A DNA stretch of 64,000 nucleotides, from sequence record LR756511.1; one strand, 5' to 3'. The notes below the pieces were generated by a model. It made no database searches and was not told where the DNA came from. It worked only from the letters and a program-made list of their open reading frames with translations. Shown here piece after piece: positions 34,782 to 41,242 of the stretch; position 1 is the first letter of the stretch, and each line of letters starts with the position of its first letter. The position numbers and the translations under genes were made by a program.

Positions 34782-35014
34782 TATTTATTTACTTTAGACA
34801 AAAAGATTGGGTCTTTCTCGCTTTCTTCATTAATCGCCAGAACAGCGTCAACAGAACAGTGTGGACATAGCGCAGTGTCATTGTCTCTATCCGTCCACTC
34901 TTTAATCTCTGAGACATTAAAAATCCGTAAGCAATGGTAACAGGCGCACTCTGTTACCATTTTCAAACGATCTTTATTATGTATGGCAAGCATTGGTGCC
35001 ATTCGAATTTCCAT
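34772..35014 (-). CDS. Small zinc-binding protein
   Basis: CACYHC ... ALCPHCSVDAV. Confidence 0.7.
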   Translation of the reverse strand: MEIRMAPMLAIHNKDRLKMVTECACYHCLRIFNVSEIKEWTDRDNDTALCPHCSVDAVLAINEESEKDPIFLSKVNKYWF

Positions 35015-37587
35015 TAATCCCCCAAACTAGAATGGTCTATATCTTCAACATCCTGTTCACTTTCGTAGTCCTGAATTTCCATATCATATTTGATAATGTC
35101 TGCTTCCGTTGCCTTTGGAACTGGCTTCGCCTGTCCCGCTGGTGGTAACATATCAGGCGCCGCTTGCTGAGGCGGTGGAGGCATTGGTGGTGGACCCCCT
35201 GGCCCTCCCACTGGCGCTGGTCCCATCGGCGGACCCCCTGGCGGTGGCCCACCTGGAGCCGCCCCTGGAGGCATTCCCTCTGGACCGAGATTTGGATTTG
35301 GTCCCCCTGGTTGCCCACCAATCTCCTGCTCGCCCTGTCCTGGCAAACCAATACCTAATATCGTTGGGTTCTGAGCAATGATTTGTAACTTCAAATCCTC
35401 TAGCTTTTGAACCTTCACCCTCGCCATCATTTCCTTGGCTTCATCCTCATTATACTTCATCCACTTTGTCAAAATGTCAAAGTCAGACAGTAATTGAGAA
35501 CCCTTCAAACTATTCGCGTTATTAATTCTATTTGTTACAATTTCCGCACGACTTAACTCACGCCAATCGCTCGGCGGCGTCATCTTTATGCTCAAATCTT
35601 CATAAGCTTCAGGAGGGAATCCTCTAAGCTTCAAATGCTTGTCGGCCACCTGATACAAAGCTTCCTCTAAATGAGCCTGTAAACGCTCAATCATACGAGC
35701 AAACTTAACGTCCTGAGCAGACAAAGTAATTCTTGTCGCATTTGGGTCTTCCAAGGAAAAGTAGTTCTTTGGGAAATTCAAAGCTGTATATAACTTGTTT
35801 CTAAAATATACAGCATCATCAATTTCGCCCAAATTCTGTGCGCCTGGAAGTGTATCAATCCTCGTATTTGACTGCGGACGAATTGGTATCCAAATATCCT
35901 CGTCCTGTGCTGGCGCGTGCCAACGTTCTTCCACCACAGATGGTCCGCCCTGAGCAAACTGATTCCTTGGAACCTTCTTCTTTCGGAATTGTTCCTTAAT
36001 ACGATCCATGAACGCTTCCGCCTTATATGGCGGCAATTGTCCCACATCAACGTAAAAACAACGGCGCTCAGGTGCGCGCGTGAGTCGGTAAATAACCATT
36101 GCGTCTTCCATCATACGCAACTGATGGGCTGGACCACGGGCAGCTTCAATTAAGCTAACACCATATGGATAGAAAGTCTTTCTGTAATCTCCAATCTTTA
36201 GGTGAATAACCTGCTCTGGTGAGAAACGAATTGCCGTAGATTGCTGCAATTCCGCTTCCGTTGCCGATGAAATTGGAGCTTTTACAATCGACTGATAATC
36301 AGGCGCATCCTTCGATTGCTGATACTCTAGAACCTTACCTTTTACCGTTTCAATACGAAACATCGTTTCTGGCGGAAGGTCATTAATCTTGTATACACCT
36401 TCCTTTGGATTATCAGGATTAATGATGATTTCCCAAAACTCATCGCCCTTAATGAAAAGTCGCTTCGCTTTGTCCCACATCGTTCTCTGATCGAGATTCA
36501 ACATATCACGATGGAAGAACAAGAAATTTAACTCATCCTGAATTTCCTTATCCGCACAATGAATCTTAAATACCTTACCTTCCTCATCCTTCTGACAATT
36601 ATGCATAACACAAGATGTTGTGCAGAAGTTCTTATGTTTCTCTACCGATAGGTCATAAACAGCCATTTTCTTATGAGGAAGAACACCAATAATACGTCTA
36701 CGATCTGGCTTCTTGGCAAGATACTTTAATTCTTGATAAGAGAAACCGTGTTTCTTCAACCAAAGAGAGATATTCAGCCATGTCATACCAATCTGGCGAG
36801 AGATTTGTTTAGTGGTCAAACCATTCCCAATTAGGCGGGCAACATGATTCACTCGTTCATATTGCTCCTGTCTTTCACCCAAACGCCACTCGTCAAGGAA
36901 TTGACGTTCGTGCAACCAACCTTGATTAAATGTGAAGATTCGTGGGAATTGATTCGTTTTAATCTTTGTTTGATGCTGATTGGCGTTTACACGGTAGAAT
37001 GGCATCAACTCGTCGCCAAACTTCAAATCTCCCGCAAAACACCATTCTCCATCACGCTTTAAAATGCGATGGTCTGGAGTAATTGTCTCCACTACCCCGT
37101 TATCAAGAACGATTTGCACGGTTTCATCGAATTTAACGAAACGTGGAGAATATGCCCAACCAATCGTATAATCCTCTGTTTCAAAGTCATAACAATAAAC
37201 AGGGAACTTCTCTCCCGCTTTATTGTTCGCTAACCATTCAATTGTTTTTGGGCCATGATAAACGGTAGAAATAAGGGTGTCGCCTGCCACGCAAGCTTCA
37301 TCCGCAAAAACCGTCATCGCCATCTCAATTTCAGGAATACTCAGAACTAGTCTGTCATACTCCTTATATCGGTTTGTTCTGTTTGTCGAGCTAGTCGTAT
37401 CGACCAGTTCGTTTTGGACTCTAATGAAAGCTCCACCTTGAGACATTGACTCAAGGTTTCGCAAGTCCATGATTGAGTCGGGACTTGTAACGCCCGCACT
37501 CGGAAAATCACGCACGTCCGACTTTTTACTCAAAGGGTCTTGCGTGAAAGCATACGTAAAAATCTTAAATAAATCGTACCAAGCCAT
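35014..37587 (-). CDS. gp20: Portal protein, T4 gp20-like, intein-containing, with Pro/Gly-rich C-tail
   Basis: LRMMEDAMVIYRLTRAPERRCFYVDVGQLP, EDIWIP, IDTLPGAQNLGEIDD and YFRNKLYTALNFP. Confidence 0.95.
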   Translation of the reverse strand: MAWYDLFKIFTYAFTQDPLSKKSDVRDFPSAGVTSPDSIMDLRNLESMSQGGAFIRVQNELVDTTSSTNRTNRYKEYDRLVLSIPEIEMAMTVFADEACVAGDTLISTVYHGPKTIEWLANNKAGEKFPVYCYDFETEDYTIGWAYSPRFVKFDETVQIVLDNGVVETITPDHRILKRDGEWCFAGDLKFGDELMPFYRVNANQHQTKIKTNQFPRIFTFNQGWLHERQFLDEWRLGERQEQYERVNHVARLIGNGLTTKQISRQIGMTWLNISLWLKKHGFSYQELKYLAKKPDRRRIIGVLPHKKMAVYDLSVEKHKNFCTTSCVMHNCQKDEEGKVFKIHCADKEIQDELNFLFFHRDMLNLDQRTMWDKAKRLFIKGDEFWEIIINPDNPKEGVYKINDLPPETMFRIETVKGKVLEYQQSKDAPDYQSIVKAPISSATEAELQQSTAIRFSPEQVIHLKIGDYRKTFYPYGVSLIEAARGPAHQLRMMEDAMVIYRLTRAPERRCFYVDVGQLPPYKAEAFMDRIKEQFRKKKVPRNQFAQGGPSVVEERWHAPAQDEDIWIPIRPQSNTRIDTLPGAQNLGEIDDAVYFRNKLYTALNFPKNYFSLEDPNATRITLSAQDVKFARMIERLQAHLEEALYQVADKHLKLRGFPPEAYEDLSIKMTPPSDWRELSRAEIVTNRINNANSLKGSQLLSDFDILTKWMKYNEDEAKEMMARVKVQKLEDLKLQIIAQNPTILGIGLPGQGEQEIGGQPGGPNPNLGPEGMPPGAAPGGPPPGGPPMGPAPVGGPGGPPPMPPPPQQAAPDMLPPAGQAKPVPKATEADIIKYDMEIQDYESEQDVEDIDHSSLGD
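36598..37293 (-). mobile_element. Intein (232 aa) in the portal gene, no intact homing endonuclease
   Basis: Block A CVAGDTLI, block B TPDHRIL, block F VYDLSVEKHKNF, terminal HN followed by +1 Cys. Confidence 0.92.
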
Positions 37588-37666: not shown

Positions 37667-38227
37667 ATGAATCAATTATTTTTAGTCGTTAGTCATTTGG
37701 GAGCAAGCAGTAACAGCTTGTGCAAGGCTATCGCCTGCACAGAAACGATTCATTGGATGCGCGAAGGTTTTGTTTACAAGCATCCCACTGACATAACCGC
37801 CTATCTTTCTGCCATTCGTCATAAGGGCGTTTTTTTAAATGAAATCCTTTACAATTATCAAATCGCTCATAAAGGAGTTTATCAAGCCGCTAATTTCATT
37901 TATTTAATCCGTGACCCCGCCAGCGCTATTCAAATCAACAAAGCCAAAGATGCTGCTTTAGCCGTTAATTACTATGTTTTTCGGCTGAGAAGGATTTATG
38001 AAATGGCTAAAGAAACCAAGAACGCAATCTTTTTGAGTTGGTACGACCTGACTGATCGAGATGGATTTGCGTTGATTAACACAAGATTACAGATTTACGG
38101 ACGATTTGAGCCAATTGTAGAAAAGAAGTTGCTTGGTCTGCCTTCGAATTATCTCAGGGAAGCAAACCAAGCATATAATCTGTGTCTCAGCAGAATGAGG
38201 AAGATCAAACACCTTGTTCAGCTTTAA
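37667..38227 (+). CDS. Sulfotransferase-like P-loop protein
   Basis: FLVVSHLGASSNSL (degenerate 5'-PSB loop) and IYLIRDP (3'-PB motif). Confidence 0.5.
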   Translation: MNQLFLVVSHLGASSNSLCKAIACTETIHWMREGFVYKHPTDITAYLSAIRHKGVFLNEILYNYQIAHKGVYQAANFIYLIRDPASAIQINKAKDAALAVNYYVFRLRRIYEMAKETKNAIFLSWYDLTDRDGFALINTRLQIYGRFEPIVEKKLLGLPSNYLREANQAYNLCLSRMRKIKHLVQL

Positions 38228-38777
38228 GGCGAATTGGTGTTTTACCACCCATTTTAGAAGAGAAAACCAAACTATTCGTCTTCCAGCTTATTCCCTTAAA
38301 CGCATTTGAACCAACCAATTCTCTACCAACACCCTTCTTCACATAAGCAATCGTTACATGAGGCTTATAGCTAGGGAACACTTGACTATTATGAACATTT
38401 TCCTTGAGAGTCCTGTTCAAATGAAAAAGATACGACCCCATTACATCTATCTTAATTACGTCAAAATCAGCATTTATGGTAAAAATGCTCACAGTGCCAA
38501 GACTGACCACAAAAGGAATCGCTCCCTTTAGAAGCGATTCAACTCTTGTGGGAGATGACGCATGAATTCCGTATAACACTGTAATATGGATTTCATCTTC
38601 GCGGCCACGATCTTGAGCCATGTATAACTCCTGATCGCCTATTTTATCTTGTCCCCAGCCTATAATCTCTTCCGCAATTACTTGCGGAACATTTACTTGC
38701 ACAGAAGAATACTCACGTACAGACCCCTTATCCGTGAATGGTCTGTAAGTCGTCGTCGTCATCATCCGTTGGTTCAC
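38205..38777 (-). CDS. 2H phosphoesterase (LigT / T4 57B-Acb1-like)
   Basis: Two HxT motifs: HITVLYG and YKPHVTIAY. Confidence 0.88.
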   Translation of the reverse strand: MNQRMMTTTTYRPFTDKGSVREYSSVQVNVPQVIAEEIIGWGQDKIGDQELYMAQDRGREDEIHITVLYGIHASSPTRVESLLKGAIPFVVSLGTVSIFTINADFDVIKIDVMGSYLFHLNRTLKENVHNSQVFPSYKPHVTIAYVKKGVGRELVGSNAFKGISWKTNSLVFSSKMGGKTPIRLKAEQGV

Positions 38778-39108
38778 TTGGTTTTATTACTCCTTGATCC
38801 TTTTTCCGATTATGAATGTCCTCAAGCTTTTTATACTCCTCAGCAATCATTTTGTCTATCATATCAAGAGTTGCCTTAACATTATATTGCTCCTGATAAA
38901 TTGGCGGCATCCAAGGACTGACCTTTTTCTTTTCCTCTTCCTTGATCTGACGCTCCTGTTCCTGCGCTGCCCTTATCCCTTCTCGCTTTTCAATATCTTG
39001 AAGCTTCTTTAAAGCCTGATAAACATGAAACCTTACCTCTCGATACGAAAACTTATTCGGTATCGAGCCAAAGGTTTCAGCTAATAAATCCTTAGTAGAT
39101 TTTCTCAT
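38728..39108 (-). CDS. Hypothetical charged helical protein
   Basis: 126-aa ORF coupled in the terminase operon. Confidence 0.7.
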   Translation of the reverse strand: MRKSTKDLLAETFGSIPNKFSYREVRFHVYQALKKLQDIEKREGIRAAQEQERQIKEEEKKKVSPWMPPIYQEQYNVKATLDMIDKMIAEEYKKLEDIHNRKKDQGVIKPSEPTDDDDDDLQTIHG

Positions 39109-39233
39109 TTTTTTGTAGCCTTTCTGTATTTTGAACTATATTTCCTTAAACGAGCCATAACTTCCGTTTCTTCCCAATATCGTTTCGCTTCTTCCATTCT
39201 TTCTTTTCTGCGATTTAACCAGTAATTCTTCAT
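39105..39233 (-). CDS. 42-aa basic protein (not in ORF track)
   Basis: MKNYWLNRRKERMEEAKRYWEETEVMARLRKYSSKYRKATKK. Abuts the upstream stop (TAAATG) and overlaps the downstream start (ATGA). Confidence 0.6.
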   Translation of the reverse strand: MKNYWLNRRKERMEEAKRYWEETEVMARLRKYSSKYRKATKK

Positions 39234-39407
39234 TTACCACCCAAATTCTTTAAGTAATTGGTCATGAGAAATTGATCTGTACGGTGGCCAGTTCTTTTCC
39301 TGCATCGCAAGCTGCATCGCCCCCTCTAATTCAAATAACGCCGCCTCTACTTGCGGTGGGTCTTGCTTTAGCAATGCTTCTATTGTTTGTAATTTCTGAA
39401 TTACCAT
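39234..39407 (-). CDS. 57-aa protein ending in the terminase C-terminal motif (not in ORF track)
   Basis: GGAG RBS, ATG overlapping the terminase's last codons. MVIQKLQTIEALLKQDPPQVEAALFELEGAMQLAMQEKNWPPYRSISHDQLLKEFGW. Confidence 0.65.
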   Translation of the reverse strand: MVIQKLQTIEALLKQDPPQVEAALFELEGAMQLAMQEKNWPPYRSISHDQLLKEFGW

Positions 39408-41242
39408 CCGAACTCCTTAAGCAGATTATCTAGCCTTCTTCTAAAGTCAAACGCCACCCCAGCCATTACTTCTTCATCTACAGTATGAAGCGGATTCAAT
39501 ATTCGTTCATTGTCTTCGAAAAAGCTCCTTGGTGCGCCCTCAATAATCTCTCTCTTAATTTCCTCATAGCTAGCCGACTTAAGTGGCTCTGATAGCTCCC
39601 TTGGCATACCAGCACCCATCGGCATCTCCCTCAAAATGCTATCTCGGACGAACAAAGCAATAGCCGTCGCCATTACCGCATCATCATGCTCACCCTTGAC
39701 AGCACCAATCTTACCCGTTTGTGGATTGTGAACGAAAGTGTTAATTTCATTAACAAGTCTCTTACTGTTGATCTTAATGGCACCATTGATGCAATGCTGC
39801 TGTAAAGCTTCTAAAATCGTTAATCTGTTAGCAACTGTAACCTTGATGCCAGCCTTCGGTGTCTTGGAAGTCGCCTTTTCAAAATAAATATTGTCATAAA
39901 ACAAGTGATGCTGGAGATTAGTCAAAACCGCACCACCCGAACCGTTACCTTCTACAACCACCAAAGCATGATTGTAGTAAATCGCTATTTCATTAAGAAT
40001 TTGTGCGAACTGATATGGTTGGATTTTATTGCTATAAAATTCGGCAACTTGTTCCATCGTGCCATTATCGAACACCTGGAACACACTGTTGTCACCTTCC
40101 TCACCGACACCTTCCGCTGTATCAACACCGATAGTATATTCGTGACCGTCTACAGGCTCTTTCCATACCCATAGTGCGCCTTCACGCTCCCAACTATCAT
40201 CAAATTCCTGCACTTCGTCTTCATCATCCTCCTCATTCGCAAGAAGCGTGTTTACCCACTTCTTAAACAGCTTACGCTTTGGAGGATTGTTTTGGGTAGA
40301 TTCCACCAATTTAGCCACAATATGAGAAGGAATATACGTTTCACCAGAACCAAGGAAACTTCTTAAAACTTCCTGCAACCAACCCTTTTCACCAAGCTGT
40401 GCTTTTTGGTCAGCGATCCAAGCAGGATCATTATACTCTGGATGGTCTGTATAATCTAAGTCTATGATGTGGAATGGCTTACCGATACGCTTGGACTTAT
40501 GGTACATTTTCTCATACCAGTTACCCAAACCATTAACCGTAGAAACAACGATGCAATTACCACCACCAGACAACGTTGGATAAATAGCTTTCCAGTGGTC
40601 ATCCATGTCTGGAATAAATGCCGCTTCGTCTAAGATTAAATACGTAATAGCAAGACCACGGGCACGCTCTGGAGTACCAAAGGTCATCTTTCCGCCTGTC
40701 TCTGGAAAATGCTTTTGGTGATCGTTCCACTTTCCGTCATTCTTTGGTGGCTGCAACCACTTTGGCAAATTCTTAACAGCCGTGTTAACAATTTCACCAG
40801 CCGTAATAGCTTCCGTGTCCGTCTTCGACAATAAAACTATCTGTTGATCTAATTTAAATAAACAACGCCATAAACACCACAATTCCGCGAGTGTAGTTAA
40901 ACCACCCTGACGGAATTTGGATATGAGGTTGAAACGATATTTTTCAAAATCTTCAATAACACCATGCTGATACTTGTAGCAAATAAAACGAACTAAACCG
41001 CGTCTAGGGTGAAGAATCTTGACATACTTATTGGCAAAATAGAAAAAGTCCAATGCGCATTTCGCATATTCAAGACGACAACGATTAACGTCGTAATTGT
41101 TATAATCATCTACGGTTTCATCTGGATCAATCTCTAATTCGTAATGAGTGATGTTGTAATAAGGCGCTGGATATCTTGCCTTATAGTATTCCTCTAAACT
41201 CTTGTACTTGCCTCTCCATAAAGAATCTTTATAATTAGCCAT
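39401..41242 (-). CDS. gp17: Terminase large subunit, T4 gp17-like
   Basis: YQHGVI, KFRQGGLTT (Walker A variant), LILDEAAFI, VVSTVNG, nuclease IGVDTAEG and HDDAVMA. Confidence 0.95.
   Translation of the reverse strand: MANYKDSLWRGKYKSLEEYYKARYPAPYYNITHYELEIDPDETVDDYNNYDVNRCRLEYAKCALDFFYFANKYVKILHPRRGLVRFICYKYQHGVIEDFEKYRFNLISKFRQGGLTTLAELWCLWRCLFKLDQQIVLLSKTDTEAITAGEIVNTAVKNLPKWLQPPKNDGKWNDHQKHFPETGGKMTFGTPERARGLAITYLILDEAAFIPDMDDHWKAIYPTLSGGGNCIVVSTVNGLGNWYEKMYHKSKRIGKPFHIIDLDYTDHPEYNDPAWIADQKAQLGEKGWLQEVLRSFLGSGETYIPSHIVAKLVESTQNNPPKRKLFKKWVNTLLANEEDDEDEVQEFDDSWEREGALWVWKEPVDGHEYTIGVDTAEGVGEEGDNSVFQVFDNGTMEQVAEFYSNKIQPYQFAQILNEIAIYYNHALVVVEGNGSGGAVLTNLQHHLFYDNIYFEKATSKTPKAGIKVTVANRLTILEALQQHCINGAIKINSKRLVNEINTFVHNPQTGKIGAVKGEHDDAVMATAIALFVRDSILREMPMGAGMPRELSEPLKSASYEEIKREIIEGAPRSFFEDNERILNPLHTVDEEVMAGVAFDFRRRLDNLLKEFGW

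What the first reader, a model, noticed from the sequence alone, without database searches (positions are those of the whole stretch)
39234..39430. Small ORF after the terminase ends with a copy of the terminase's own C-terminal motif
Seen: the terminase ends ...RLDNLLKEFGW-stop. The next ORF, whose ATG overlaps those codons and whose RBS lies within them, ends ...SHDQLLKEFGW-stop, so 8 of 9 residues are identical. The codons differ at synonymous positions (GAG TTC GGA versus GAA TTT GGG), which points to selection on the peptide rather than a fresh DNA duplication. Established: C-terminal tails of large terminases commonly dock on the portal. Inference: a 57-aa terminase-tail mimic that competes for or caps the portal (packaging timing or termination), or a decoy for a host sensor of terminase. 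The ORF is missing from the supplied track.
Basis: partly seen in the sequence, partly recalled or inferred. Interest (0 to 1): 0.72.

Follow-up and report, generated by a model that had tools for sequence, protein, structure and literature searches.

The report
Small protein carrying terminase's tail
Right after the DNA-packaging motor gene of an uncultured 595-kb phage sits a real, conserved 57-residue gene whose product ends in the same seven-residue tail as the motor, so it probably binds wherever the motor's tail binds, though this has not been tested.

Summary
On the minus strand, the T4-type large terminase TerL (39401..41242) ends ...DNLLKEFGW. A 57-aa ORF (39234..39407) starts 7 nt inside the TerL end and ends ...DQLLKEFGW.

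The ORF is a real gene family. I found ten members (57-78 aa), all in relatives of this phage. Nine end in the identical heptapeptide, written with nine different 21-nt strings, and synonymous sites are saturated. The tail is therefore kept by selection on the peptide.

The predicted layout is a helical hairpin resembling one TPR unit, then a variable flexible linker, then a copy of about 19 residues of the TerL end.

LLKEFGW is the near-invariant end of a large uncultured TerL clade. In the whole 595-kb genome only these two proteins carry it.

The TerL stop codon is an insertion hotspot: relatives have homing endonucleases there and fresh duplications of the tail. The copy probably arose that way and was then retained.

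The gene is accessory, since at least nine related lineages lack it.

What it does is inferred only. It most likely occupies the receptor of the TerL tail, perhaps the portal, as a competitor or adaptor. I found no prior description.

The parts
39401..41242 (-). Large terminase TerL, T4 gp17 type, 613 aa. ATPase and nuclease domains run to about residue 538. An 85-residue C-terminal extension follows.
   Evidence: Pfam Terminase_6N and Terminase_6C, both above cutoff. Matches T4 gp17 structures 3ezk and 3cpe at E 1.5e-26, with the alignment ending at residue 528. AF2 model mean pLDDT 83.7.
39404..39460 (-). TerL C-terminal docking-type tail, residues 595-613 (GVAFDFRRRLDNLLKEFGW). A disordered linker leads into a short helix at 605-610.
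   Evidence: In 110 homologs the shares identical to the window are R602 0.99, L608 0.91, E610 0.97, F611 1.00, G612 0.89 and W613 0.98; 95 of the 110 end exactly at this motif. pLDDT is below 50 for residues 578-601, then helix 605-610. Pattern scans found 47 and 69 stretches of DNA encoding this tail, nearly all of them TerL ends.
39413..39418 (-). Shine-Dalgarno-like AAGGAG for the small ORF, formed by the TerL K609-E610 codons, 5 nt before the ATG.
   Evidence: Read directly from the sequence. SD-like motifs precede 47% of long ORFs in the window against 12% of random positions. The K codon is AAG in all nine K-bearing TerL tails of loci that hold the small ORF.
39234..39407 (-). Small ORF, 57 aa: the TerL-tail-bearing accessory protein. 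Its start overlaps the TerL stop by 7 nt (ATGGTAA).
   Evidence: Ten family members of 57-78 aa. All lie downstream of TerL, eight of ten with the same 7-nt overlap; L143 stands 1.1 kb away and the overlap in L148 was not checked. N-terminal 37 codons give pN/pS 0.34 with synonymous sites saturated. No minus-strand terminator-like site lies between the TerL stop and the small ORF.
39297..39407 (-). N-terminal helical hairpin of the small protein (residues 1-37: helices 2-14 and 20-36 around a PP turn). It resembles a single TPR-like unit.
   Evidence: AF2 with a 7-sequence alignment gives pLDDT 90-95 over residues 1-30. The family profile hits many-repeat TPR proteins. No similarity to TerL (hhalign E 0.3). 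No Pfam, PHROG or PDB fold match.
39267..39296 (-). Flexible linker, residues 38-47. This is the shortest version in the family; relatives have up to about 30 residues.
   Evidence: Indel-rich, poorly conserved columns. pLDDT 60-75.
39237..39263 (-). Tail copy DQLLKEFGW, residues 49-57. The TerL-homologous stretch extends back to about residue 39 (window 39293).
   Evidence: hhalign of the family against the TerL C-terminus gives 96.4% probability and E 1.3e-9 over the last 19 columns. Nine members carry an identical heptapeptide written as nine different 21-nt strings, mean 4.4 nt differences.
39105..39233 (-). Next small ORF, 42 aa, basic, starting MKNYWL. Its ATG directly follows the TAA of the small ORF. 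It is a variable accessory gene of the same hotspot.
   Evidence: Where the small ORF is absent (L001), this gene abuts the TerL tail directly.
38728..39108 (-). Conserved 126-aa coiled-coil protein with an acidic C-end. It marks the far border of the variable region. It may be a packaging partner, but this is unproven.
   Evidence: Found downstream of TerL in every tail-bearing TerL locus whose downstream ORFs I listed. No family hit.

Best explanation
The 57-aa ORF is a genuine, accessory phage gene.

**Architecture (predicted).** Its product is a small two-part protein. A helical hairpin resembling one TPR unit is joined by a flexible linker to a copy of the last ~19 residues of TerL. That copy ends in the same short helix and aromatic end, D-x-LLKEFGW.

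**Origin (inferred from relatives).** The TerL stop codon is a hotspot where genes are inserted and the tail-coding end is duplicated. One such duplication fused a TerL tail onto the hairpin ORF.

**Maintenance (shown).** The tail has since been kept by purifying selection on the peptide. It evolves independently of the TerL copy, over a time long enough to saturate synonymous sites.

**Expression (inferred).** The ORF is made from the TerL mRNA. Initiation is at an ATG or GTG embedded in the TerL stop region, using the K-E codons of the TerL tail as its ribosome-binding site. Its output should therefore be tied to TerL output.

**Mechanism (inferred).** The tail occupies the same receptor site as the TerL tail. 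By analogy with P22, T3 and lambda, that site is most likely on the portal or procapsid vertex. The small protein would then do one of two things. It could compete with TerL for docking, tuning when the motor binds or leaves. Or it could fill the portal sites that a five-subunit motor leaves free on a twelve-subunit ring, bringing its hairpin there. Because many close relatives lack it, it modulates packaging and is not a core part of it.
For: **A real, conserved gene**
- Ten members were found by word-indexed and exhaustive searches.
- All lie downstream of TerL. In eight of the ten loci the start overlaps the TerL stop by the same 7 nt; in L148 this was not checked.
- In L143 it stands alone, 1.1 kb away behind a homing endonuclease.
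- The N-terminal domain gives pN/pS 0.34.

**Tail selected as a peptide**
- Nine of ten members end in the identical LLKEFGW, coded by nine different 21-nt strings. Every degenerate codon position uses at least two codons.
- Tails within one genome differ as much as tails across genomes (3.9 against 4.1 nt).
- The residue before LL differs consistently: S, N, T or R in TerL, E, A or Q in the small ORF.
- L143 keeps K where its own TerL has R.
- The window's two tails show no significant DNA-level repeat.

**Tail is a functional motif in TerL**
- It is nearly invariant in 110 homologs of 51-82% identity and in more than 100 pattern hits.
- It sits after a low-confidence disordered linker.

**Exclusive to two proteins:** in the whole genome only TerL and this ORF carry it.

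**Origin by junction duplication**
- L022/L118 carry a clear 32-of-36-nt direct repeat that fuses the tail to a DUF6980 ORF. That ORF's three homologs lack the tail.
- L037 carries a partial duplicate.
- L144 and L146 have homing endonucleases inserted exactly after the EFGW codons.

**Ancient in the clade:** the basal window lineage has it and nested lineages lack it.

**Literature:** deleting the C-terminal tail of P22 TerL abolishes portal binding, as reported earlier for T3 and lambda (PMC5290284). Adaptor proteins insert C-terminal tails into portal clefts (PMC5290284, PMC12407722).
Against: - No expression data exist and no binding partner has been tested. The receptor of the TerL tail is unknown in this clade.
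- For T4-type motors it is disputed which TerL domain faces the portal (PMC9958956 against PMC10893049). From memory, C-terminally truncated T4 gp17 still packages DNA in vitro. The tail may therefore serve another partner, such as a small terminase or TerL itself.
- The gene is absent from at least nine related lineages (L001, L076, L144-L147, L005-L007).
- One member (P0142) has lost the GW end while its TerL keeps it.
- The L022 case shows that tail fusions can arise by accident.
- Only ten sequences support the selection argument.
- The TPR-like reading of the hairpin rests on repeat-protein hits. Pfam gives no direct TPR match for the ORF itself.
Confidence: 0.5

Rival explanations
1. Neutral by-product. 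The tail is only debris from duplication at an insertion hotspot. The hairpin ORF happens to read through a duplicated TerL end to reach a stop codon, and the tail has no function of its own.
For: - Such accidents occur. The L022/L118 DUF6980 ORF is fused to a fresh 36-nt duplicate, and its three homologs lack the tail.
- L037 carries a 12-nt partial duplicate.
- P0142 has a degraded tail.
- The gene is dispensable.
Against: - Nine of ten members keep all seven residues while synonymous sites are saturated and the adjacent linker is full of substitutions and indels.
- DNA-level similarity to the TerL tail has decayed to chance level. The event is therefore old, and a neutral tail should have decayed with it.
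Confidence: 0.12
2. Constraint at the nucleotide level. The tail-coding DNA is conserved because it serves as ribosome-binding site and start for the next gene, or as a recombination or homing-endonuclease target. The peptide itself would not matter.
For: - The tail codons do double as SD and start. AAGGAG plus ATG or GTG lies inside GG(A/G)TGGTAA.
- Downstream genes start within 0-14 nt of the small ORF's stop.
- Homing endonucleases are inserted exactly at this junction in L144 and L146.
Against: - Every synonymous position in the small ORF's tail varies: AAA/AAG, GAA/GAG, TTT/TTC, GGG/GGA, and four Leu codons. No replacement change occurs.
- The spacing to the next start varies.
- About 80% identity over 21 nt is a poor substrate for homologous recombination.
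Confidence: 0.08
3. The peptide is selected, but for a partner other than the portal. Candidates are the conserved 126-aa coiled-coil protein next door, an unidentified small terminase, or TerL itself (subunit contacts or autoinhibition). The small protein would then regulate terminase assembly or activity and not docking.
For: - The tail-bearing TerL clade always has the ~120-aa coiled-coil gene just downstream.
- The nearest cultured relative has a different TerL end and runs straight into the portal gene.
- The T4 small terminase regulates TerL activities (PMC9958956).
- The portal-facing side of T4-type TerL is debated (PMC9958956, PMC10893049).
Against: - There is no evidence of contact with any of these candidates.
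- AF2 does not place the tail confidently against TerL's own domains (pLDDT 53-65).
- Documented roles of TerL C-terminal tails are in portal or procapsid binding (PMC5290284).
Confidence: 0.22
4. Long TerL isoform. A -1 frameshift near the TerL end reads into the small ORF and gives a longer terminase that again ends in the tail.
For: - The small ORF lies in the -1 frame of TerL.
- A fusion would explain why the same end is needed twice.
Against: - In the window only three codons are open upstream of the ATG in that frame.
- No X XXY YYZ slippery site is present.
- A start codon plus SD is conserved in all members.
- In L143 the gene is 1.1 kb away from TerL.
Confidence: 0.02
5. Decoy for a host immune sensor that recognises terminase.
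For: Avs-type sensors do detect large terminases (PMC12642450).
Against: - From memory of the Avs literature, those sensors recognise the folded terminase domains. A 9-residue tail on an unrelated hairpin offers none of that surface.
- No defence-related context was seen.
- The tail is a conserved functional motif of TerL itself.
Confidence: 0.03

Closest known systems
C-terminal portal-binding tails of large terminases (P22 gp2 residues 483-499; T3 gp19; lambda gpA), PMC5290284
   Same: A short, conserved peptide at the very end of TerL, on a flexible segment after the nuclease domain. In those phages, removing it abolishes procapsid or portal binding.
   Different: The sequence differs: the P22 tail is basic and proline-rich, this one is an amphipathic helix with an aromatic end. 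Binding has not been tested here. In none of those phages is a second protein with the same tail described, as far as I found.
Adaptor or head-completion proteins that insert a C-terminal tail into clefts of the portal clip (P22 gp4, P74-26 adaptor), PMC5290284 and PMC12407722
   Same: A second protein uses a flexible C-terminal tail on the portal surface that the motor also uses. This fits a hand-over or competition between motor and later factors.
   Different: Adaptors are larger, essential, form 12-mer rings and do not share the terminase tail sequence. The small ORF is 57 aa and dispensable. No adaptor-like fold was found.
SaPI1 CpmB against the phage 80alpha scaffolding protein: competition through a shared C-terminal helix (from memory, not checked here)
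   Same: A small helical protein carries a copy of another assembly protein's C-terminal docking helix and competes for the same site.
   Different: That is a parasite redirecting its helper's capsid size. Here both proteins belong to the same phage and the same operon, and the target is the packaging motor's site.
N-terminally shortened products of T4 gene 17 made from internal starts (from memory, not checked here)
   Same: Extra polypeptides that share the terminase C-terminus are made from the same transcript.
   Different: Those are truncated terminases. Here only about 19 residues are shared, and the rest is an unrelated hairpin encoded by a separate gene.
Mobile-element insertions that duplicate or replace the 3' end of their target gene (free-standing homing endonucleases; islands integrated in tRNA gene ends): general knowledge
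   Same: Insertion occurs exactly at the end of a conserved gene, with a direct repeat of the target's end. This is seen in L022, L037, L144 and L146.
   Different: In those cases the duplicate is a by-product. In this family it became the selected end of a different protein.

Membership tests
T4-type large terminase (the upstream gene) | N-terminal ATPase domain (Terminase_6N) | tested here: met
   Pfam 23.4 bits against a cutoff of 22. Aligns with the T4 gp17 ATPase over residues 58-244.
T4-type large terminase (the upstream gene) | C-terminal RNase H-like nuclease domain | tested here: met
   Terminase_6C 33 bits against a cutoff of 22.6. Aligns with gp17 over residues 357-528.
Small terminase (TerS) as identity of the 57-aa ORF | DNA-binding N-terminal domain, central oligomerisation coiled coil and TerL-binding C-domain, about 100-180 aa; or a hit to a TerS family or structure | tested here: not met
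   57 aa. No Pfam, PHROG or PDB fold hit. Absent from many relatives, whereas from memory the T4 small terminase is essential in vivo.
TPR repeat proteins (N-terminal hairpin) | Helix-turn-helix unit of about 34 residues matching a TPR profile | tested here: inconclusive
   The family profile hits multi-repeat TPR proteins and a repeat protein with near-identical units. Pfam gives no TPR match for the ORF itself.
TPR repeat proteins (N-terminal hairpin) | Several tandem units forming a superhelix | tested here: not met
   Only one hairpin, helices 2-14 and 20-36.
Eroded 3' remnant of a terminase allele | Similarity to TerL beyond the tail, at the DNA or protein level | tested here: not met
   Only the last 19 columns align. 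N-terminal part E 0.3. DNA similarity is at chance level.
Eroded 3' remnant of a terminase allele | ORF broken or unconserved in relatives | tested here: not met
   Ten intact members with a conserved start and N-domain; pN/pS 0.34.
Homing endonuclease or its remnant | GIY-YIG, HNH, LAGLIDADG, NUMOD or PD-(D/E)xK motifs | tested here: not met
   No Pfam or PHROG hit. True endonuclease genes of 252-311 aa occur in or beside the TerL junction in L143, L144, L146 and L147.
Portal adaptor or head-completion protein | Adaptor fold, dodecameric ring, essential and universally present | tested here: not met
   No fold match. Patchy distribution. Oligomeric state is not testable here.
Functional mimic of the TerL docking tail (the claim made here) | Same terminal motif, kept by selection on the peptide | tested here: met
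Functional mimic of the TerL docking tail (the claim made here) | Binds the same receptor site as the TerL tail | not testable with these tools
   Needs complex prediction or a solved complex. Only single chains could be modelled.

The most novel reading that the evidence does not exclude
A phage-encoded mimic of the packaging motor's own docking peptide, translated in step with the motor. It would occupy the tail-binding sites on the twelve-fold portal that a five-subunit terminase cannot fill, or displace the motor when packaging ends. That would be a natural regulator of the 12:5 symmetry-mismatch interface, born from a duplication at a homing-endonuclease hotspot.
Probability: 0.3. Interest if true: 0.8.

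Novelty: new variant of a known kind. Interest (0 to 1): 0.55.

Why it matters
- **It points to a docking motif.** How the large terminase holds on to the portal vertex, and how it lets go, is still argued, especially for T4-type motors. This locus singles out a seven-residue, nearly invariant TerL end. It also shows that evolution has copied just that peptide onto an unrelated small protein and kept it. That is strong indirect evidence that the tail is a self-sufficient docking motif.
- **It supplies a natural reagent.** The small protein is, in effect, a competitor peptide with a handle. It could be used to find the tail's receptor by structural means.
- **It documents a route for gene birth.** Insertion hotspots at the stop codon of a conserved gene can hand that gene's terminal motif to a neighbouring ORF.
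- **Limits.** The family is small, confined to uncultured huge phages and dispensable. No function has been shown.

Tried and rejected
- **Whole-ORF duplication of the TerL end.** By eye, the start of the hairpin resembles the TerL helix at 559-571, in collinear order. hhalign gives E 0.3, so I dropped it.
- **-1 frameshift fusion with TerL.** Rejected: three open codons upstream, no slippery site, its own SD and start, and a stand-alone copy in L143.
- **Tail as a motif shared by many proteins of the phage** (hub binding, as with clamp-binding tails). Rejected: no other open frame in 595 kb carries it.
- **Gene conversion between the two tails.** Rejected.
- **Paralogs of the hairpin elsewhere.** None in the genome. 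A look-alike ORF after the L143 copy did not reach E 1.
- **Family and fold searches on the small ORF.** Pfam, PHROG, PDB sequence and fold searches found nothing usable. Rfam found nothing in the region.
- **Cultured relatives.** The nearest is Flavobacterium phage immuto (31.5% identity). Its TerL, like that of LR756508, ends differently, so no laboratory phage with this tail was found.
- **Chance hits to the tail pattern.** These were an out-of-frame site in an uncharacterised ORF of a phage contig, an archaeal RNase P protein and a repeated 40-aa frame. I set them aside.
- **Literature.** Searches for the motif and for the accession returned nothing.
Full report
**1. What is there**

The window matches the unannotated public record LR756511.1 at 100% over the 2.6 kb queried; the record is an uncultured phage of 595,163 bp. 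The window contains no N.

The genes in question lie on the minus strand:
- An ORF of 613 aa (39401..41242) is a T4-type large terminase, TerL. Pfam Terminase_6N and Terminase_6C are both above cutoff. It matches the T4 gp17 structures at E 1.5e-26.
- That structural alignment stops at residue 528. An 85-residue extension follows and ends ...FDFRRRLDNLLKEFGW.
- A 57-aa ORF (39234..39407) starts at an ATG inside GGATGGTAA, overlapping TerL by 7 nt. AAGGAG lies 5 nt upstream. It ends ...SHDQLLKEFGW.
- The TAA of the small ORF is followed at once by the ATG of a 42-aa ORF.

SD-like motifs precede 47% of long ORFs in the window against 12% of random positions, so the proposed ribosome-binding site is credible. 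No minus-strand terminator-like site lies between the TerL stop and the small ORF. No Rfam family matches the region.

**2. Is it more than chance?**

I read the rest of the genome in separate pieces and scanned each one. Of 6,388 open frames of at least 40 aa, only TerL and this ORF have an end resembling LLKEFGW. At the DNA level the two tails match at 17 of 21 nt, which shuffled sequence reaches as well. The resemblance is therefore in the peptide.

**3. The ORF is a conserved gene**

A profile search of 5.8 billion proteins and an exhaustive HMM search of 1.84 billion representatives gave ten distinct members of 57-78 aa.

Every one is encoded downstream of a TerL that is 59-81% identical to the window's. 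In eight of the ten loci the start has the same 7-nt overlap; in L148 this was not checked. In L143 a homing endonuclease gene lies in between and the small gene stands alone, 1.1 kb from TerL.

The family has three parts:
- a well-conserved N-terminal 37 residues;
- a linker that varies in length and sequence, of which the window has the shortest;
- an invariant end.

AlphaFold2 predicts helices 2-14 and 20-36 with pLDDT above 90, then a low-confidence linker, then a short helix at 48-54.

The family profile also hits long TPR proteins through many repeats. The hairpin thus resembles a single TPR-like unit, but Pfam itself gives no TPR match for the ORF. No fold match was found in the PDB. 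No paralog exists in the genome.

**4. Selection**

Among seven genomes, synonymous sites are saturated (pS 0.76 or more). The N-terminal domain has pN/pS 0.34.

Nine of the ten members end in the identical heptapeptide, written with nine different 21-nt strings. The mean difference is 4.4 nt, and every degenerate codon position uses at least two codons.

The two tails of one genome are no more alike than tails of different genomes (3.9 against 4.1 nt). The residue before the leucines is S, N, T or R in TerL but E, A or Q in the small protein. L143 keeps K where its own TerL has R. The tail is therefore maintained independently, as a peptide.

One member (P0142 in L142) has a degraded end while its TerL keeps the motif.

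**5. How much is terminase-derived?**

Profile-profile comparison of the family with 39 TerL C-termini aligns only the last 19 columns, at 96.4% probability and E 1.3e-9. Longer family members also keep the aromatic-acidic and arginine positions upstream of the tail. The hairpin shows no significant likeness to TerL (E 0.3).

**6. The tail in terminases**

A degenerate DNA pattern for LLKEFGW-stop found 47 stretches in viral contigs and 69 in metagenome contigs. Nearly all are the ends of 540-680-aa T4-type terminases of many lineages.

In 110 homologs of 51-82% identity:
- the last residues are almost invariant (F611 1.00, W613 0.98, E610 0.97, R602 0.99);
- the ~35 residues before them are poorly conserved;
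- 95 of the 110 end exactly at the motif.

AlphaFold2 with this alignment gives a confident two-domain body, a helix at 557-567, a disordered stretch (pLDDT below 50 at 578-601) and a short terminal helix at 605-610. This is the layout of a tethered docking peptide.

The nearest cultured phage (Flavobacterium phage immuto, 31.5% identity) and another huge phage end differently. No laboratory model carries this tail.

**7. Origin**

The stretch between TerL and a conserved ~125-aa coiled-coil gene is a variable cassette region. The TerL stop codon itself is an insertion point:
- In L144 and L146, a 285-300-aa endonuclease gene (NUMOD3 plus a nuclease core) sits directly after the EFGW codons. 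TerL then reads on for 13-15 hydrophobic residues, followed by a degenerate copy of the tail end.
- L147 has a LAGLIDADG gene abutting the TerL start.
- In L037 a 12-nt piece of the tail is duplicated.
- In L022/L118 a DUF6980 ORF is flanked by a clear 32-of-36-nt direct repeat of the tail plus junction, and so ends in ...RLLKEFGW. Its three homologs are 72-78 aa and lack the tail.

That last case is a fresh accident and shows how the fusion arises. In the window's family the same kind of event is old and its product was kept.

A tree of TerL ends puts the window at the base of the carrying clade, with lineages L001 and L076 nested inside it lacking the gene. Together with L143 (60% TerL identity), this indicates an early gain and repeated loss. 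L001's single tail has the GGG codon typical of the small ORF's copy. This fits loss by recombination between the two tails, which is an inference.

**8. Mechanism**

What is shown:
- a conserved accessory gene;
- co-located with TerL and probably co-translated with it;
- ending in a selected copy of the TerL terminal motif on a flexible linker.

What is inferred: the copy binds what the TerL tail binds.

The literature supports portal binding by TerL C-terminal tails in P22, T3 and lambda. It also supports C-terminal tails of adaptor proteins inserting in portal clefts (PMC5290284, PMC12407722). For T4 it is disputed which TerL domain faces the portal (PMC9958956, PMC10893049). From memory, truncated gp17 still packages DNA in vitro. 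The portal is therefore the leading candidate, not an established one.

Two modes of action fit the anatomy:
- a competitor that tunes motor docking or release;
- a filler or adaptor at portal sites that the pentameric motor leaves empty.

The gene's patchy distribution means it modulates packaging and is not required for it.

**9. Comparison and novelty**

The principle of copying a partner's docking helix to compete for its site is known in phage assembly. An example, from memory, is SaPI1 CpmB against the helper phage's scaffold. A separate protein carrying the terminase's own tail was not found in the searchable literature. The family has no Pfam or PHROG entry. I rate it a new variant of a known kind.

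Noticed in passing
window 35014..37587 (-): The portal protein (Portal_T4/gp20, E 2.6e-73) carries an inserted intein-like segment at about residues 151-330. Intein_splicing scores 33.8 bits, just under the 35.8 cutoff, and the insert is flanked by Cys...HN-Cys. The portal gene of relative L143 is annotated with the same two families.
   Followed up: partly
window 38205..38777 (-): A 190-aa 2H-phosphoesterase-like protein with sub-threshold hits to 2_5_RNA_ligase2 and anti-CBASS Acb1. It lies downstream of the ~125-aa coiled-coil gene in most relatives whose downstream region I examined, so it may be a cyclic-nucleotide-degrading counter-defence enzyme.
   Followed up: no
window 38728..39108 (-): A 126-aa coiled-coil protein with an acidic end (...DDDDDDLQTIHG). 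It is conserved just downstream of TerL in every tail-bearing TerL locus whose downstream ORFs I listed, but the nearest cultured relative has no such gene between TerL and the portal. It is a candidate packaging partner or small terminase. No family hit.
   Followed up: partly
window 39105..39233 (-); L145:4959-5340: A family of small basic ORFs starting MKNYWL. The N-terminus is conserved and the rest is variable. It is sometimes present in two tandem copies and always lies in the cassette region after TerL.
   Followed up: no
L144:4378-5280, L146:4447-5304, L143:1855-2613, L147:1569-2504: Homing endonuclease genes sit in or beside the TerL junction of close relatives. Three carry NUMOD3-type repeats (Pfam match in L144 and L146; read by eye in L143) plus a PD-(D/E)xK-like core read by eye; one is LAGLIDADG. 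In L144 and L146 the insertion removes the TerL stop and adds 13-15 hydrophobic residues after EFGW.
   Followed up: partly
L022:4930-5274 (-) and L118: In an unrelated phage lineage, a DUF6980 zinc-ribbon-like ORF is fused to a freshly duplicated TerL tail through a 32-of-36-nt direct repeat. Its homologs elsewhere stop about 43 residues earlier, without the tail.
   Followed up: yes
L142:933-1121: One member of the small-ORF family ends ...EAIKEFRE in place of ...LLKEFGW, although the TerL beside it keeps the motif. This is either a decaying copy or a shifted specificity.
   Followed up: partly
L097, L111, L115 (TerL of 536-549 aa): A shorter, deeply divergent T4-type terminase lineage also ends in LLKEFGW. 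It is preceded by an acidic run where the others have the usual basic R-R-K patch.
   Followed up: no
window 37667..38227 (+): A 186-aa ORF on the opposite strand interrupts the minus-strand packaging operon between the phosphoesterase gene and the portal gene. No Pfam hit.
   Followed up: no
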